The notes under the pieces: generated by a model
What the model saw: only the letters and a program-made list of their open reading frames with translations
Told to the model about the DNA's origin: nothing
Databases searched by the model: none
Shown here: piece by piece, positions 42,353 to 48,681 of the stretch
Layout: each line of letters starts with the position of its first letter
Position numbering within the stretch: position 1 is the stretch's first letter
Origin: Blastocladiella emersonii ATCC 22665
Taxonomy: Eukaryota; Fungi; Blastocladiomycota
Direction of reading: 5' to 3'
Length of the DNA: 64,000 nucleotides
Assembly: GCA_025594325.1 (NCBI GenBank)
Contig: JANHCV010000010.1
Span: 496,001-560,000 of the forward strand
Position numbers and translations under genes: made by a program

Positions 42353-44672
42353 TTACTTGGGCGGCGCGGGCGCGTCGGGTGAGACCACGGGCGCGTCCTC
42401 GCCGGCGAACGTGCACCGCTCGTCCTTGCCGGTGATCCAGGGCGTGCACTCGGAGTAGTGGTAGCCGCTCATGAGCATGCGCTCGTACAGGCGCGTGTGG
42501 TCGCGCAGCATAAGGTCGGTCATGCGCTTCACGATCTTGTCCTTGCCGGTCCACGCGTGCGTAACGACGGTGCCGTGGCAGTACTCGTCGCCGGACCAGC
42601 CGTCGGCCTCGTCGCACGGCGCGATGATGAAGTCGGTGCCCTCGGTCATGTTGGGCCGGATGTAGTTGTTGAAGACTAGACCGCGGCGAGCGGTTAGCGA
42701 GCGGTTCAAATTTAATGTAAAGAGGTTTTCCTTGCCCGTTTGCTCGTGCGCCCAATCGCCCTTCCATCTAGCACAATCAGGATTCTCGTCAGGACAGCGC
42801 AACATGGTGCGCAGCGAGTCGCGGAGCAGCGTCGTGTTGCGGGCGATCCAGAACCCGGTGTTGGTCCCGTTCGTGTTCGGCCACGGCGAGAATGGGCGGT
42901 CCATGGCGAGCAGCAGCGACGACGCGGGCCCGAACCCCCACCGGTCCATCATCCACTGGATCGACTTGTCGGGCTGCTCAAAGTACGCGTCGCCGTCGAG
43001 GAACACGACGATCTCGTAGCGGTGCAGGGCGTCGTAGATGGCCTTGATCTTGCCCCACGTCCCGTAGAACCCGGGCGGCGACGTGATCTGGACGCGCCGG
43101 TAGTCGTACCCGTGGCGGATCGCGTACCACCCGTTGTACAGCGCCGACATGGTCACGTAGCTGAGGCGCAGCGGGTCGTCGCCGACCGAGCTCAGCCGTT
43201 CGAGCGGCCGCGAGTCCGAAGACATGATCAGGACGCGCTCCTTGCCAATGGCGCCGGGCTGCGTCACGCGCCGGTCCCACGGCAGCGAGTCGTTCTTGAG
43301 CTGCCACACCTGCGCCAGCAGGTCCGCCGCGCTCGGCGCCGGCGGCGCGACGGCGGGCGGGACCGACAGCCACGAGAGCATGCACGCGGCGAGGATCAGG
43401 TTGGTCAGCAGCGTGAACCCGCCGAACACGAGGAAGTTTGTCTTGGTCGAGCGCGCGGTGCTACACGGCGAGGGAGGTGAGTTGCCGGGCGGGAATCGCA
43501 CGAAGAAGAGCATACCCTTGGCGTCCGTCAATGGCGCCCTCGATCCACGGGCGCGCGGCGTACGCGGCTATGCCGATGAGCGAGACGGCCATGCCGAGGA
43601 GCTTGATGGGCGCGAGGTCCTGTGCGAGCGAGCCGGAGGTGACGGCGCCGGCGAGCACGATGAGCGTGGTCTTGAGGTGGCCGACGACGTTGTATGCGAT
43701 GGCCGAGGTCTTCTGGATGAGCGAGTTTCCGAAATAGTTGGCGGCGAGGGCGAGGACTGCCGTGACAACGACCCATCCCCACGGCGCGCAGGCGAGCTGG
43801 TCAATCGCGTCGCCGCCACGCACCATGAGCGGGATCTCGACGAGGACGACGAGTAGCGCGAGGACCGCGGTCGAGTAGGGCGCGAGGACCGCGACCGACT
43901 GCATGCCGCGCACGTCCCTGAACGACGGCATGTGCTGCAGCGTGACCTGGCACAGCGACGTGAACGCGACGGCGCAGATGCCCGCGACGAGGCCCGTCAG
44001 GTTGGTCGCGTACTCGTGCTTGGTCGAGAACACGACGCCGAGCAGCACGACGGCCAGCGTGAGCAGCTTCAGGCGGTTGGGCGCGGGCACGCGGAACAGC
44101 GCCGTCTGCAGCACGCCGATCGCCGGCAGACACGCCATCTTGGTCAGCTGGTACACGCCGACCGAGTTGAGCTGCAGCGACAGGTTCATGAAAAAGAGGC
44201 CGAGCGACAGCGCGCCGCCGATCACGAACGCGTCGCGCCGCGGCACCCCCGCCGGGATCGACAGCACGCCGGCGCGGCCGAGCGCGCGCGTCGCGGCCCA
44301 GCAGAAGGCCTGGTGCAGCAGCGTCAGGAGCAGCGGGCGCGGGAACGTTGACAGCACGTGCTTGTTGGCAAGCACGATGAGCACGCTCACGGCCACGTTG
44401 GCCGAGACGTAGATGGCGGCCTCGGTCGTGGACGTGGCGGCGCGCGGTTTGCCGATGGCGGCGGAAGCGGTCGCGCAGCACGGCGAGCCGTCCTCGAGCA
44501 GCGGCTTGAGGCCCCGGTCGTCGTCGCCGCAGTCCACGGCCTTGCCCGCGGGCGAGGGCGAGGCCGGCGACATGACGCGCACGGCAATGAGCTCGTCGTC
44601 GTCGCCGCTGTCGGACCCGCGGTCGCCGCTCGAGCGCCGCTGCTGCCACTGGCCGGTGCTGTGGCTCGACAT
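42353..44672 (-). CDS. Predicted fusion: TPT/DMT-family nucleotide-sugar transporter + GT34 (GMA12/MNN10-like) glycosyltransferase
   Basis: Exons 44672-43516, 43460-42736, 42675-42353. Transporter motifs: SVLIVLANKHVL, FPRPLLLTLLH, NLSLQLNSVGVYQLTK, KTSAIAYNVVGHLKT. GT motifs: signal anchor, YAIRHGYDY, WGKIK, VVFLDGDA (DxD), HEQ. The 55-nt intron GTATGC...ACTCAC...TAG joins them in frame. Confidence 0.8.
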
Positions 44673-45220
44673 GGTGGTGGAGCGCGTTCGGGTGAGCAAA
44701 GTTGGACGGTTGGGCGGACGAGGTCGAGAGGGGAGGGAGGAAGCAGGAGAGCGCAAGACTTCGACGGCTGTTGCGCGGCGGCGCGACGCGTCGGACCCCT
44801 GCACCCACGCGCTGCCCAAGTAAATTTCCGCCCTGTGCGCGCCGTGAACCGTTCCGCTGGTCCGCCACCATCACCATCACCGGACGCGACGCGCGAGCCG
44901 CTTTTCACACGCGTCGCCCTGATCGCGCGATTGTCTCCCACCGCGACTCCCTGCAGAACCCCCGCGAACTCTCCGCTCGAATTCTCTCCCGGCGCCGAGT
45001 CTCGGCCGCAGAGACAAACAAGTGTTCACGGACGAGGGAATGGAACAACCCGCAGTCGATGAAGTCTCTCACAGTACCTCGCCCTTCCGCGCGAACACGG
45101 CGACCGCATCGTCGTGGAAAGACGCTCTTCGAGCCTGATTATGTGTTGAGAAGCTCGCCCGTGATGGATGGCCTGATCAAGGCCCAGTTTGAAGGCTTGA
45201 AGTGAGTCGCAATCGAGTAG

Positions 45221-48200
45221 TAGAGGTCCGTCCCCTTGATTTTTTTTCGGCTTGCCCCGCGACCCACCCGACGCGTGTGGGCTGGATCCCACGGATGCGT
45301 GGATCCGCTTAGGATAAGCTGGCCGCGCGCGCTCACCTTCGACCCCTTCCCCCTCCTTAATAAAATGGATTCCATGAAGCACCACTGCATGCAGCTGTCT
45401 CTGGAGACCTAAACCATGAATTCCCCGCGGCCGAAAACTTTGCGCCGGTCCGCCCGCACGGCGGCGATGAACGCCCAGTCGCGCGACGACCCCGCGGCGA
45501 CTCCTGCGACCCCGGCCGCTGCCAGCAGTGCTTCTCGCACGGCTTCGCGCGTCTCGCAGGTCCCGGTCGTGGCCAGCCACCCACCCGGTCTGTCGTTGAG
45601 TGGGCCGATCGCTCCCGTCACCGTGGGACCCGTCCAGCCACACGCGCGGCCGCCCGCGCTTCCTTCGCCCGTGTCACCAGCGTTCGCCCAGACCACTCCC
45701 GCTCTTGCTCCCGCTGCTTCGGTCGCTTCTGCACTCGCAAAACGCCCCGCTGAGTCCGTCGCTGATGCCGATGGCCATCCTGCAAAGCGGGCCCGCAAGT
45801 TCGCGGCCACACCGGCATCTCCTCGGCGTCACAAGCAACGGCAAGTTGGCCACGGAAACGACGCTGCGGCCTTCCTGCCGCACATGACCGCGAGCGCGTC
45901 TTCTGCTTCCGCGCCGCCCCCGCCGCCGCCGTCATTGAACACCTCCAGTGTTTCTGCTCCTGCCTCGGCCTTGGCCTCGGCGCTGCCCGGGTCCCCAAAC
46001 CAACTCACCATCTCTCCGCTTCCGACTGCCGATGATACCGCGGTCCCCGATGCTCTCGCCGCGCCCGAGTTTGATCCGGTCAAGTGCTTTGCGTCTCACA
46101 TCCGGAACAAGGCTCTATACAAGAGCTTTACTATCTCGTGTGTTGGTTCCGCGATCTACGCGACGTGTGTTGATTGCCCAAACACCCGGTACAAAGTTGC
46201 AAACGTGGTCGGCAGCAGTACCAGTTTGGATGGCTCGCGCAACTTGACGGACCACTGGCGTGCTCGCCACGACGATGAGCTTACCCTCCACGAACAGCAT
46301 GCCGGCCCGCACGACGACTCGGCGCCCGTCGAAACGGAGCCCAACCTGCCCATGGTCCGTGTTGGACTCGTGAAGCTCACGGTCATCGACAACTATCCAC
46401 TCTGCTTTGTCGAGACGGACACCTTTCGCGAGTTTATGCACGCCGCATGCCCGCAGTTCCACTCCCCGAGCGCGACCACTCTACGTCGATGGGCCGTCAA
46501 CCTCTTCTTTGACGCCTTTGACATGGCGGTGACCAATTTTCGCCAAGCGATGGGCGTCAGCGTTGCTTTCACAACAAACATTTGGACATCCACGCACGGC
46601 CATCGCTCGTGCATGTTGGTCACCGTTCACTCAGTGGTCGGCCATTGGAAGTTGGTCGCCTTCCCAATCGCCTTCATTCCAATATCGTCGCCTCATTCCG
46701 GCAAGCGCATCGCGCAAGCTCTGTTCGAAGTCATGAAGCAGTTCCACGTTGTCGACCTCGTGGTCGGCGTCACGCTTGACAACGCGAGCAACAACCTCGG
46801 CGCGATACGTGAACTCGAAAAGTTGATGGCCGCTGCGGGGAGCCGGCTGGCGCAGCTCGGAAATTCCTGCGTCGCGCATTCTCTTCACCTCATCGTGCAG
46901 GAGGGGTTCCGCAAGGACGGGTCGCTTCATGGCCTTGTTGAGCGCTTTCACACGATCGGGAACAAGATTCGCAACTCGCCAAAGATTTGCGCGGAGTTCC
47001 GGGACATCTCGGACGACGTACCGGCGACGCTTCCGCCCAAGGCCATCGAGATCCGGTGGGGCAGCACCCTGCGCCTTCTCGAGTCTTTCTTCAAGCAGCG
47101 CACGCGCATGGACGAGCTGCTTTCGCTTGAACGCATGGATCCCGTCACCCCCGAGGAGTGGAACTTGGTTGAGCAGATTATCCAGCTGCTGCGCCCGTTT
47201 CAAGACGCGACCGAACTTGTCTCGGGCGAGAAGTACTTGACGATGTCGCACGCGCTCTCCACGTACCTCACTCTCGCTCGCGACCTTCAGCGGGTGTCGC
47301 GCGAGTGCGTGCACCCCGATCTCGTTTCGGTGGCCAAGCGCATGAACACCAAACTCATGTCATACTGGCACACGGTGCAGCACAACGCAGCTTTCTGTTC
47401 TTTCCTCAACCCTTACGAGGGCGGCAGCCGGATGCTCCGCCACAAGCTCCGACACCACTGCAACGCGTCCCAAGACGCCGCGGAGGCCGCTGTCAACGAA
47501 TTGCGCGCGTGGTGCGGACTGGCTACGCGTCGCGCGAGTGGAAGCAGACTAATTCGGCACCTCACGTATAGCGTGCTCAAGGAGATGGAGCTCAAGGTGG
47601 CCGAGTCAAGCGGCGCGGCCCCCGCGGCCACCTCGGCCGCCATGAACTCGGCCAAGTTTGACGCGCATCTCATGGAGCTGTCCTCGGACGGAGTGCCCAA
47701 CCTGCTTTCCGATGCTCCATCTTTGGTTCACGACGTCGACTGCTCCCGCGAGCTCGAGGACTACGAGAACGAGATCACCCTCATGATGACGCGCAGGAAG
47801 GCCGACCTGCTCAACCGCCGGCCCGTTGCCGAGCGCACGCACGACTCGACCTTCGAGTTCTGGAGAGCGAACGAGCAGCGCTTCCCGACTCTCGCGTTCC
47901 TCGCCTGCCTGCAAGTACTTCTGCTTGCCGGCCTCGTCCGTGTCGAGCGAGCGGGTACGCCCTGATGGCATTCCCGTCCCGTTGGGCATCGACTTGCGTC
48001 ACTAACAGGTCGATTACTGCGAGCGTAGCTGTTCAGCCGGTCGGGTCGCCTCGTTTCCGCTCGCCGGAACCAGCTCAAGGACGACATCATCAACGCCACG
48101 ATGCTCCTCAAGCCGCTCTTCGAGAACTCCGAGCTTCTGGGCATCGACTTCACCGAGCTGTACGGTAAGATGACGCGCAGCAAGCCGTCGACCACCCCGC

Positions 48201-48568
48201 CGGGCGAGGGCAACGGGTCCGCGGCCGCGGGCGAGGTCCCCGAACCCACGGCGGGTGACTTGGACGAGGTGGTCGCGATCCTGCACACGGAGGTCGGGGA
48301 TACGGCCAGCGGTGCGGATGCTGCAGCCCCGAACGGCGACGAGTTCGAGACGTTCGAGCTGGTCCCGGCGTGCTGAGTGGTGCGGCGAGTCCGACACTTG
48401 TTTTCTCTCCGGATCCTGAATCCTCATCCCAAATCATCCTGAATGCATCAAGTTTTTTATTCGTAGTCCTCGGCTGGATTTTTAGAGGTGAGGGGGAGCA
48501 GCCCGCCAGCTTATCCACACGATCCATATCCAGCCCAGCCCAGCCCACGCGATCCATGGGGACCTCTA
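45221..48568 (+). mobile_element. Full-length hAT transposon (3.35 kb)
   Basis: TIR tagaggtcc (45221) / ggacctcta (48560-48568), 8-bp TSD tcgagtag (45213-45220 / 48569-48576), and similar subterminal gtgggctgg and ggataagctgg motifs at both ends. Confidence 0.93.
45416..48376 (+). pseudogene. hAT transposase (BED-like finger, DDE core, dimerisation domain), inactivated
   Basis: C..C...H...H finger, TTNIWTS (normally TTDxWTS), TLDNASN, CVAHSLHL, IRWGST. A GCCT duplication at 47903-47910 shifts the frame before PASSVSSER; intron 47955-48028, then LFS.SG...RRN.L. Confidence 0.88.
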
Positions 48569-48681
48569 TCGAGTAGCAAGTAAATAGACGCTCTGCGGTC
48601 AGCGGTCAGGGATTTGAGCGCCGGCCGCTCTCGCCACCAGTCCCCGCTCCTCCACCTCCCTCACTTGGCCTCTGGCCGACC

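What the first reader, a model, noticed from the sequence alone, without database searches (positions are those of the whole stretch)
42353..44672. Nucleotide-sugar transporter fused to a GT34 glycosyltransferase by splicing
The two ORFs look separate and overlapping, but a canonical 55-nt intron (43515-43461; GTATGC donor, ACTCAC branch, TGTAG acceptor) removes the transporter stop. It joins ...DGRQG to TARSTKTNFLV... exactly in the GT frame, and the GT ORF's only nearby ATGs lie upstream in the transporter exon or inside this intron. The topology works: a ~10-TM transporter ending in the cytosol, then the GT signal anchor, then a lumenal DxD catalytic domain. That would be a single-chain import-and-transfer unit able to channel its donor sugar in the Golgi. 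Transporter-transferase complexes are known, but I do not recall this covalent fusion being characterised.
Basis: partly seen in the sequence, partly recalled or inferred. Interest (0 to 1): 0.8.

Follow-up and report, generated by a model that had tools for sequence, protein, structure and literature searches.

The report
Sugar transporter fused to its glycosyltransferase
This fungal gene really does join a Golgi-type sugar-nucleotide pump and a sugar-attaching enzyme into one protein; related water-mould fungi carry the same fusion, and I found no paper that describes it.

Summary
On the minus strand, a TPT-family transporter ORF (ATG 44672) and a GT34-like ORF (stop 42353) are joined in frame by a 55-nt GT..AG intron (43515-43461). 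No RNA run was listed, so splicing is not shown directly.

The splice signals alone prove little, because many formal GT/GC..AG pairs also keep the frame open. The decisive evidence is comparative:
- The spliced 734-aa product is colinear with fused proteins of Blastocladiella emersonii, B. britannica, three Allomyces species and Synchytrium microbalum.
- In B. emersonii, window residues 81-626 align to one uninterrupted reading frame that spans the junction.
- In Allomyces, a 759-codon frame is open throughout.
- A phase-2 intron sits at the junction in the window, Allomyces and B. britannica.

Structure models give 10 transporter helices, an eleventh anchor helix and a GT-A domain. The nearest folds to that domain are GT34 enzymes (XXT1, A64R, Gma12, Mnn10), and the DxD motif is intact. 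The GDP-mannose transporter motifs of Vrg4 are absent, so the donor sugar is unknown.

The fused architecture already exists in public databases as unnamed predicted proteins. I found no paper describing it. This scan also noted and followed up a similar fusion elsewhere in this genome (s1-280124). Verdict: real, conserved and uncharacterised, of moderate interest.

The parts
43516..44672 (-). Exon 1. It encodes the start Met, a disordered acidic and Ser-rich cytosolic tail (about residues 1-80), the 10-helix TPT/nucleotide-sugar-transporter domain and the start of the cytosolic linker (to the first two bases of Gly386).
   Evidence: ORF. Pfam TPT PF03151 E=5e-12, 46.2 bits against a cut-off of 30, residues 88-371. 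The N-terminus aligns at the Met with B. emersonii P0072.
43560..44411 (-). Transporter (TPT/DMT) domain proper, residues 88-371. It contains the family-invariant GHLKT (H332, L333, K334, T335) and Y371.
   Evidence: The family profile hits only Candida Vrg4 in the PDB (E=1.7e-5), and Vrg4's GALNK and YNN motifs are not kept. The domain is 70% identical to the B. emersonii fused orthologue.
43461..43515 (-). Junction intron: 55 nt, phase 2, GTATGC...ACTCAC...TGTAG. It contains the transporter-frame stop (43463-43461) and an in-frame ATG for the GT frame (43513-43511).
   Evidence: A phase-2 intron lies within 7 alignment columns of this one in Allomyces (both paralogues) and B. britannica. There is no intron here in B. 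emersonii or Synchytrium. No RNA evidence.
42736..43460 (-). Exon 2. It encodes the basic cytosolic linker, the eleventh TM helix (signal anchor), a Pro/Ala-rich stem and the N-terminal two thirds of the GT-A catalytic domain.
   Evidence: Colinear with a single open frame of B. emersonii DNA.
43370..43441 (-). TM11, the type II signal anchor (residues about 393-416, FLVFGGFTLLTNLILAACMLSWLS).
   Evidence: Hydropathy peak 2.07 at residues 396-414. The equivalent helix is 369-401 in the model of Allomyces P0073. A hydrophobic segment is present in all fused orthologues.
42989..42997 (-). DxD motif: Asp-Gly-Asp in VVFLDGDAY (residues 541-543).
   Evidence: D155 and D157 of the GT piece are nearly invariant among 38 homologues. 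They align with the MDSDA motif of XXT1 and XXT2.
42676..42735 (-). Second intron: GC..AG, 60 nt, in frame and without a stop, with a CTAAC branch. It lies inside the GT domain after HEQT.
   Evidence: Removing it gives WAHEQTVFNNYIRP, which aligns without gaps to Allomyces and Synchytrium. Both B. emersonii copies have an intron at the same position. The 20 retained residues are the only long low-confidence stretch in the model (pLDDT 47). AT-rich dip.
42353..42675 (-). Exon 3: C-terminal third of the GT domain plus the stop codon (42355-42353).
   Evidence: 61% identical to B. emersonii over residues 627-721.

Best explanation
One three-exon gene on the minus strand (44672-42353) encodes a 734-residue protein, most likely Golgi-resident. 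In order it has a cytosolic tail, a 10-helix TPT/SLC35-type nucleotide-sugar antiporter domain, a short basic cytosolic linker, an eleventh helix acting as a type II signal anchor, a Pro/Ala-rich stem, and a lumenal GT-A glycosyltransferase domain of the GT34 kind with an intact DxD motif.

**Shown here**
- The gene model holds, by colinearity with orthologues.
- The fusion is conserved in Blastocladiomycota (Blastocladiella, Allomyces, and this genome) and in the chytrid Synchytrium.
- The junction intron is shared with Allomyces and B. britannica.
- Both domain folds are as stated.

**Inferred from established knowledge of NSTs and type II Golgi transferases**
- The transporter's C-terminus is cytosolic, so the eleventh helix places the GT domain in the lumen.
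- The transporter imports the donor nucleotide sugar in exchange for NMP.
- The tethered GT uses that donor. This gives 1:1 stoichiometry and co-localisation of supply and use, and possibly local channelling.

The donor is unknown. The GDP-mannose transporter motifs are missing, and characterised GT34 enzymes use UDP-Gal, UDP-Xyl or GDP-Man. I think a UDP-sugar is the more likely donor, but this is a weak inference.
For: - **Gene model.** Searches give the ORFs, the intron and a single terminal stop.
- **Domains.** TPT scores 46.2 bits, above Pfam's cut-off. The GT family profile hits only the GT34 xylosyltransferases XXT1, XXT2 and XXT5 in the PDB, across the DxD region. 27 of 38 homologues match Pfam GT34.
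- **Window GT model.** pLDDT 84. The best solved match is XXT1 at 1.8e-9, then PBCV-1 A64R. The top 29 Swiss-Prot matches are all XXT, Gma12/gmh, Mnn10 or their plant 'glycosyltransferase 2-7' homologues.
- **Fused homologues.** An exhaustive HMMER search returned P0072, P0073, P0079 and P0194. All carry TPT N-terminal to the GT match. They are named as B. emersonii H9P43_000816, A. macrogynus AMAG_06423 and AMAG_02609, A. arbusculus, A. javanicus, S. microbalum and B. britannica.
- **Junction independent of splicing.** In B. emersonii, residues 1-670 lie in one exon within an 801-codon open frame. Allomyces has a 759-codon open frame. Window residues 81-626 align to one B. emersonii frame at 61% identity.
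- **Domains evolve together.** Identity of transporter / GT to the window is 70/69% for B. emersonii, 36/50% for Allomyces and 29/36% for Synchytrium.
- **Orthology.** The tree places the window with B. emersonii at 100/99 support, inside a clade of fused genes.
- **Topology.** Eleven hydrophobic helices. The linker before TM11 is basic. Near-invariant Cys residues and four N-x-S/T sequons lie in the GT part.
Against: - There is no transcript evidence; no RNA run was listed.
- The donor site is not unique. Donors 43563 and 43548 also give an in-frame fusion.
- The window's own GT sequence is below Pfam's GT34 gathering score (17.5 against 23), and structural TM-scores to GT34 proteins are only 0.40-0.45.
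- An in-frame ATG inside the intron (43513) could in principle start a stand-alone type II GT. B. emersonii has a stand-alone paralogue (H9P43_000815), which shows that the anchor+GT module can exist alone.
- Localisation, transport, transfer and channelling are all untested.
Confidence: 0.87

Rival explanations
1. Two separate, overlapping genes. The transporter ends at the stop at 43463-43461 with the tail YALLRAIPARQLTSLAV. A stand-alone type II glycosyltransferase is translated from ATG 43513, from its own transcript or an internal promoter. The apparent intron is coincidental.
For: The ATG at 43513-43511 is in the GT frame and precedes the anchor helix. Many formal splice combinations keep the frame open, so the signals alone are weak. 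A stand-alone anchor+GT paralogue exists in B. emersonii. No RNA data.
Against: The ATG is simply part of the donor consensus GTATGC. Neither the 18-codon transporter tail nor the 5' extension of the GT ORF has a counterpart in any orthologue. Orthologues encode both domains in one uninterrupted frame. A phase-2 intron is conserved at this spot in two other lineages. A promoter would have to lie inside the transporter coding sequence.
Confidence: 0.06
2. The fusion gene is real, but the junction intron is a regulated switch. Retaining it yields a transporter-only protein (stop at 43463-43461). Splicing yields the fused protein. The cell would then tune free against tethered transporter.
For: In this window, retention ends the protein 18 codons after the donor, leaving a complete 10-helix transporter. 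By my own reading of the intron printed, no script, the B. britannica junction intron also reaches an in-frame stop (TGA) if retained. The intron has been kept at the domain boundary in three lineages.
Against: In Allomyces AMAG_06423 the intron is in frame and has no stop, so retention there would not uncouple the domains. B. emersonii and Synchytrium have no intron at this place. There are no expression data.
Confidence: 0.05
3. A decaying or non-functional fusion. One of the two domains is a dead remnant, as appears to be the case for the GT domain of B. britannica.
For: The fused GT domain of B. britannica has lost the DxD motif (VVSLSPGAVV) and sits on a very long branch.
Against: In the window, both reading frames are intact over 734 codons. 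The DxD, the near-invariant H/G/Y/W/N/Q/C positions of the GT family and the invariant transporter residues (K104, N163, N169, Q175, HLKT, Y371) are all present. Identity to B. emersonii is even across both domains (70% and 69%).
Confidence: 0.02

Closest known systems
Non-covalent NST-glycosyltransferase complexes of the mammalian Golgi (SLC35A2 with UGT8, B4GalT1 and B4GalT4; SLC35A2/A3 with Mgat1-5), reviewed in PMC9368800 and shown in PMC6453868
   Same: A nucleotide-sugar transporter is physically coupled to the lumenal transferase that uses its cargo. The proposed benefit is the same: local supply.
   Different: Those are separate polypeptides of the SLC35A (Nuc_sug_transp) type that associate reversibly. 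Here the partners are one chain, the transporter is TPT-type, and the transferase is GT34-like. The review mentions no natural fusion.
GT34 glycosyltransferases: Arabidopsis XXT1/2/5 (PDB 6BSU, 9P3J), S. pombe Gma12/gmh, S. cerevisiae Mnn10, PBCV-1 A64R (PDB 2P6W)
   Same: GT-A fold, a DxD motif in the same strand-loop context, type II anchor plus stem plus lumenal domain, and best matches by both profile and fold.
   Different: Only 13-18% identity and TM-scores of 0.40-0.45. The window is below Pfam's threshold. Extra Cys-rich C-terminal elements are conserved in this fungal subfamily. None of the characterised members is fused to a transporter.
Vrg4-type GDP-mannose transporter (Candida albicans, PDB 9S35/9S36)
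   Same: It is the only solved protein that the transporter profile finds by sequence (E=1.7e-5). It shares the 10-helix DMT fold.
   Different: Vrg4's GALNK is replaced by GHLKT, and its YNN stretch (the FYNN motif) by hydrophobic residues. UniRef's automatic name 'GDP-mannose transporter' for the Allomyces orthologues is therefore not supported.
Deposited fused orthologues: B. emersonii H9P43_000816, B. britannica BC828DRAFT_403819, A. macrogynus AMAG_06423 and AMAG_02609, A. arbusculus GGF31_000919, A. javanicus GGF32_002996, S. microbalum SmJEL517_g06269
   Same: The same two domains in the same order with the same anchor helix. They are colinear with the window protein.
   Different: All are unnamed gene predictions. 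The B. emersonii model drops about 50 GT residues through a wrong donor. The Synchytrium model carries an unrelated Cys-rich C-terminal extension after a 2.3-kb intron. The B. britannica GT domain lacks the DxD.

Membership tests
TPT / nucleotide-sugar transporter family (Pfam PF03151, DMT superfamily, SLC35-type) | Sequence match above Pfam's curated threshold | tested here: met
   46.2 bits against a cut-off of 30, E=5e-12, residues 88-371 covering profile positions 6-290 of 291.
TPT / nucleotide-sugar transporter family (Pfam PF03151, DMT superfamily, SLC35-type) | Ten transmembrane helices in the DMT fold | tested here: met
   Hydropathy of the window protein. The model of Allomyces orthologue P0073 has 10 helices with block pLDDT mostly 75-97, dipping to about 59 in the loop near residue 305. 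It matches SLC35B1, plastid TPT, Vrg4 and the CMP-sialic acid transporter with TM-by-target 0.6-0.8. The window's own transporter was not modelled.
TPT / nucleotide-sugar transporter family (Pfam PF03151, DMT superfamily, SLC35-type) | Nucleotide-sugar/NMP antiport activity in the Golgi | not testable with these tools
   Needs proteoliposome or complementation assays.
GDP-mannose transporter (Vrg4/GONST1 type) | FYNN and GALNK substrate-binding motifs (the motif definition is from my memory of the Vrg4 structure paper; the residues compared are those printed by the tool) | tested here: not met
   In the profile alignment to Candida Vrg4, MVGALNK aligns with vvgHLkt, and MYYNNLLS aligns with a hydrophobic stretch. 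H-L-K-T is invariant in all 8 fused proteins.
CAZy GT34 / Pfam PF05637 (Gma12/Mnn10/XXT) | Sequence match above Pfam's curated threshold | tested here: not met
   The window scores 17.5 bits against a cut-off of 23 (E=0.0038). The B. emersonii paralogue P0001 passes at 24.4 bits. 27 of 38 homologues match at E<0.01.
CAZy GT34 / Pfam PF05637 (Gma12/Mnn10/XXT) | GT-A fold with a DxD motif aligned to that of GT34 enzymes | tested here: met
   FLDGDAY aligns with WMDSDAM of XXT1 and XXT2. D155 and D157 are nearly invariant. The window's model is a GT-A fold with pLDDT 84.
CAZy GT34 / Pfam PF05637 (Gma12/Mnn10/XXT) | Nearest solved and reviewed structures are GT34 members rather than another GT-A family | tested here: met
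   In the PDB, XXT1 is first (1.8e-9) and A64R next; GT8, GT6 and LH3 are weaker. The Swiss-Prot top 29 are all XXT, Gma12/gmh, Mnn10 or their plant homologues. TM-scores are modest (0.40-0.45).
CAZy GT34 / Pfam PF05637 (Gma12/Mnn10/XXT) | Retaining alpha-transfer from UDP-Gal, UDP-Xyl or GDP-Man | not testable with these tools
   Needs an enzyme assay of the lumenal domain.
Fused NST-GT34-like proteins of Blastocladiomycota and Synchytrium (database predictions only) | Colinear alignment through transporter, anchor helix and GT domain | tested here: met
   alignment; tblastn of the window product on the orthologous loci; window is sister to the B. emersonii genes, support 100/99.
Fused NST-GT34-like proteins of Blastocladiomycota and Synchytrium (database predictions only) | Junction encoded without any dependence on a predicted intron in at least some members | tested here: met
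   B. emersonii: residues 1-670 in one exon. Synchytrium: residues 147-446 in one exon. Allomyces AMAG_06423: 759-codon open frame.
Fused NST-GT34-like proteins of Blastocladiomycota and Synchytrium (database predictions only) | A single spliced transcript or single polypeptide observed | not testable with these tools

The most novel reading that the evidence does not exclude
Covalent transporter-transferase fusion may be a lineage-wide strategy in Blastocladiomycota and some chytrids rather than a one-off. Earlier notes of this scan list transporter fusions to GT31-like and GT77-like domains in the same genome (not checked by me). If so, these natural pairs would show which orphan TPT-type transporter serves which glycosyltransferase. 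They would also give a direct system to test whether tethering channels the donor sugar. The conserved phase-2 intron at the domain boundary might serve as an uncoupling switch.
Probability: 0.3. Interest if true: 0.72.

Novelty: new variant of a known kind. Interest (0 to 1): 0.55.

Why it matters
How nucleotide sugars reach the right Golgi transferase is still debated. Transporter-transferase complexes have been seen by FRET, PLA and NanoBiT in mammalian cells (PMC9368800, PMC6453868), but their functional benefit is unproven.

A natural, conserved, single-chain version would help in two ways:
- It argues on evolutionary grounds that close coupling is advantageous.
- It offers a simple experiment: compare the fused protein with its split halves. 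B. emersonii even supplies a natural split paralogue.

It also pairs an orphan TPT-type transporter with a defined GT family, which could help assign the specificity of both. For genome annotation, it shows that the two ORFs here should be called as one gene. It also shows that the deposited B. emersonii model and the automatic name 'GDP-mannose transporter' need correcting.

Tried and rejected
- **RNA evidence.** The look-up of sequencing runs listed no run.
- **Genome-contig scan with the GT piece.** No relatives found; the collection is bacterial and archaeal.
- **The search for homologous proteins with fused P0072.** Only 2 hits.
- **The search for homologous proteins with the window transporter region.** No hit. 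The word filter appears to be swamped by hydrophobic and low-complexity words. I could therefore not build a background set of free transporters, and could not test whether the Synchytrium and Blastocladiomycota fusions share one origin on the transporter side.
- **Single-sequence PDB searches of both pieces.** Nothing found. Only profiles gave hits.
- **ESM Atlas search of the transporter.** Only generic TPT/EamA clusters, with no substrate clue.
- **Catenaria P0074 (1153 aa).** Tested as another possible fusion. Its N-terminal 525 residues show no similarity to the transporter.
- **GDP-mannose specificity.** Rejected because the Vrg4 motifs are absent.
- **The search of earlier findings by sequence.** Blank.
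Full report
**1. What is in the sequence**

All features lie on the minus strand.
- An ORF starts at ATG 44672 and runs to a stop at 43463-43461.
- A second ORF, in a different frame, runs from upstream of 43460 to a stop at 42355-42353.
- Between them lies the 55-nt stretch 43515-43461. It begins GTATGC, carries ACTCAC at 43482-43477 and ends TGTAG.
- Removing it joins ...AIDGRQG to TARSTKTNFLV... in frame. The intron is phase 2, with Gly386 split as GG|C.
- A second intron lies inside the GT domain: 60 nt, GC..AG, 42735-42676, in frame and without a stop. With both introns removed, the product is 734 residues with a single terminal stop.

**2. Is it more than chance?**

The splice signals alone are not. 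In this GC-rich region, 119 formal GT/GC..AG pairs give an open joined frame, and three GT donors share the acceptor at 43461. Donor 43515 has the best consensus. It also keeps YAAR, which B. emersonii shares, and Y371, which is invariant in the family. No public RNA run was listed for this stretch, so splicing is not observed directly. The case rests on comparison with other genomes.

**3. Comparative evidence**

I ran an exhaustive HMMER search with the GT piece against 1.84 billion representative proteins. It returned long proteins in which the GT match is C-terminal:

| Protein | Length (aa) |
|---|---|
| P0072 | 726 |
| P0073 | 732 |
| P0079 | 719 |
| P0194 | 796 |

Pfam finds a TPT transporter domain N-terminal to the GT match in all four. 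They are B. emersonii H9P43_000816, A. macrogynus AMAG_06423 (cluster mates AMAG_02609, A. arbusculus, A. javanicus), Synchytrium microbalum SmJEL517_g06269 and B. britannica BC828DRAFT_403819.

The window's spliced product aligns with them from the start Met to the C-terminus, including a hydrophobic helix between the two domains.

I then fetched their DNA and mapped the exons:
- **B. emersonii:** residues 1-670 (transporter, anchor and most of the GT domain) lie in one exon, within an 801-codon open frame.
- **A. macrogynus AMAG_06423:** a 759-codon frame is open from start to stop. The annotated 81-nt junction intron is in frame and has no stop.
- **Synchytrium:** the junction lies inside one exon (residues 147-446).
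- **The window's product:** its residues 81-626 align to a single B. emersonii frame at 61% identity, straight across the junction at residue 386.

In these relatives the fusion does not depend on any intron call.

**4. The junction intron is itself conserved**

Allomyces (both paralogues) and B. britannica have an intron within 7 alignment columns of the window's. All are phase 2, with donors GTACGT or GTACGC. B. emersonii and Synchytrium have none at this place.

The second, GC..AG intron is also conserved in position in both B. emersonii copies. Its 20 'retained' residues are the only long low-confidence stretch in the window's GT model.

**5. Who is related to whom**

A maximum-likelihood tree of GT domains places the window with the two B. 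emersonii genes (support 100/99). Next come Allomyces, B. britannica and Catenaria. Synchytrium and stand-alone GTs of Dikarya lie further out.

Both domains diverge in step:

| Compared with the window | Transporter identity | GT identity |
|---|---|---|
| B. emersonii | 70% | 69% |
| Allomyces | 36% | 50% |
| Synchytrium | 29% | 36% |

The genome is therefore a Blastocladiomycota relative whose own proteins are not in the searched collections. No row was flagged as the window's own.

B. emersonii also has a GT-only paralogue, H9P43_000815. It lies head to head with the fused gene, and the duplicated part begins at the anchor helix. The tree places it inside the fused clade. It is therefore a secondary split, and it shows that the anchor+GT module is separable.

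**6. What the domains are**

*Transporter*
- Pfam TPT scores 46.2 bits against a cut-off of 30.
- The AlphaFold model of the Allomyces orthologue (mean pLDDT 80) shows ten helices. It matches SLC35B1, plastid TPT, Vrg4 and the CMP-sialic acid transporter. Its Swiss-Prot neighbours are PPT/TPT, SLC35E/C, GDP-fucose, UDP-xylose and UDP-Rha/Gal transporters.
- A profile of the eight fused transporters finds only Candida Vrg4 in the PDB (E=1.7e-5). However, Vrg4's GALNK aligns with an invariant GHLKT, and its YNN stretch aligns with hydrophobic residues.
- The automatic name 'GDP-mannose transporter' is therefore not supported. The substrate remains open.

*Glycosyltransferase*
- The window scores only 17.5 bits on Pfam GT34 (cut-off 23).
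- A 38-sequence profile hits only the GT34 xylosyltransferases XXT1, XXT2 and XXT5 in the PDB, across the DxD region. 27 of 38 homologues match GT34.
- The window's model (pLDDT 84) is closest to XXT1 and then PBCV-1 A64R. Its top 29 Swiss-Prot neighbours are all XXT, Gma12/gmh, Mnn10 or their plant 'glycosyltransferase 2-7' homologues.
- The DxD (D541-G-D543, 42997-42989) and other near-invariant positions are intact.
- It is best described as a divergent fungal subfamily of the GT34 kind. Stand-alone members occur widely in Dikarya.

**7. How it most likely works**

Shown here:
- Ten transporter helices are followed by an eleventh helix (residues about 393-416) and then the GT-A domain.
- The linker before helix 11 is basic.
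- The GT part carries near-invariant cysteines and four N-x-S/T sequons.

Inferred from what is established for NSTs (both termini cytosolic) and for type II Golgi transferases:
- Helix 11 carries the chain across the membrane, so the catalytic domain is lumenal.
- The transporter imports the donor in exchange for NMP.
- The tethered transferase uses it, giving fixed 1:1 stoichiometry and co-localisation.

True channelling is a hypothesis. The donor is unknown. Because the GDP-mannose motifs are absent and GT34 enzymes commonly use UDP-Gal or UDP-Xyl, I lean weakly towards a UDP-sugar.

**8. Rivals**

- **Two overlapping genes.** This needs ATG 43513, inside the intron, as the GT start. It is contradicted by the uninterrupted frames in orthologues, and by the lack of any counterpart for the transporter's 18-codon tail.
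- **Regulated intron retention giving a transporter-only isoform.** This is possible in the window and in B. britannica. By my own reading of the B. britannica intron printed, retention there also meets an in-frame stop (TGA); no script checked this. It would not work in Allomyces AMAG_06423, and there are no data.
- **Decay.** Unlikely here, since all conserved positions are intact. The B. britannica GT domain, however, has lost its DxD.

**9. Novelty**

Full-text searches found no description of a natural transporter-glycosyltransferase fusion, and no paper naming any of the orthologues' locus tags. A 2022 review of nucleotide-sugar delivery lists only non-covalent NST-GT complexes. The library does not cover all journals.

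The architecture is already present in public databases as unnamed predictions. This scan has also noted other transporter-GT fusions in the same genome. One of them, s1-280124, was followed up with the same conclusion: fused, shared with related fungi, no description found. I did not check those loci.

I class this as a new variant of a known kind: a covalent form of known transporter-transferase coupling. It is real and conserved, untested at the bench, and of moderate interest.

Noticed in passing
L001:5071-6561 (minus) and L001:7001-9404 (plus), B. emersonii JANHCV010000001.1: A GT-only paralogue (H9P43_000815, 448 aa) lies head to head with the fused gene H9P43_000816. The duplicated part starts at the anchor helix (residue about 427 of P0072). 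The tree places it as sister of 816 inside the fused clade. This looks like a natural split of the fusion by partial duplication.
   Followed up: partly
L001:9010-9237: The deposited B. emersonii model P0072 seems to use a wrong donor and drops about 50 residues of the GT domain. Window residues 627-721 align to L001 9117-9401, and the true intron sits where the window has its GC..AG intron.
   Followed up: partly
P0194 (B. britannica), GT domain; L003:3001-5522: The fused GT domain has lost the DxD motif (VVSLSPGAVV in place of VVFLDGDAYF) and sits on a very long branch (2.98), while its transporter domain stays 56% identical to the window's. It is possibly a dead transferase retained as a lumenal appendage.
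   Followed up: partly
L004:4797-7149 (S. microbalum): After residue 561, the Synchytrium model continues across a 2.3-kb intron into a Cys-rich repeated C-terminal part that has no counterpart in the other fused proteins. This is probably a merger with a downstream gene.
   Followed up: no
P0074 (Catenaria anguillulae, 1153 aa): The GT domain of this family sits at residues 526-846, after a 525-residue hydrophobic N-terminal region. That region shows no similarity to the TPT domain by BLAST or Pfam. It may be a different membrane fusion partner or a gene-model merger.
   Followed up: partly
L002:1876-3109 and L005:1-1197 (A. macrogynus): In both Allomyces paralogous loci, a separate SLC35A-type transporter gene (Pfam Nuc_sug_transp, 382 aa) lies just upstream of the fused gene on the opposite strand. 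So a second, free nucleotide-sugar transporter is a conserved neighbour.
   Followed up: no
window 45213-48576: A long hAT-transposase-like ORF (45416-47965, plus strand) lies directly upstream of the gene's 5' end. Another first-stage note already covers it (s1-077252). I did not examine it.
   Followed up: no
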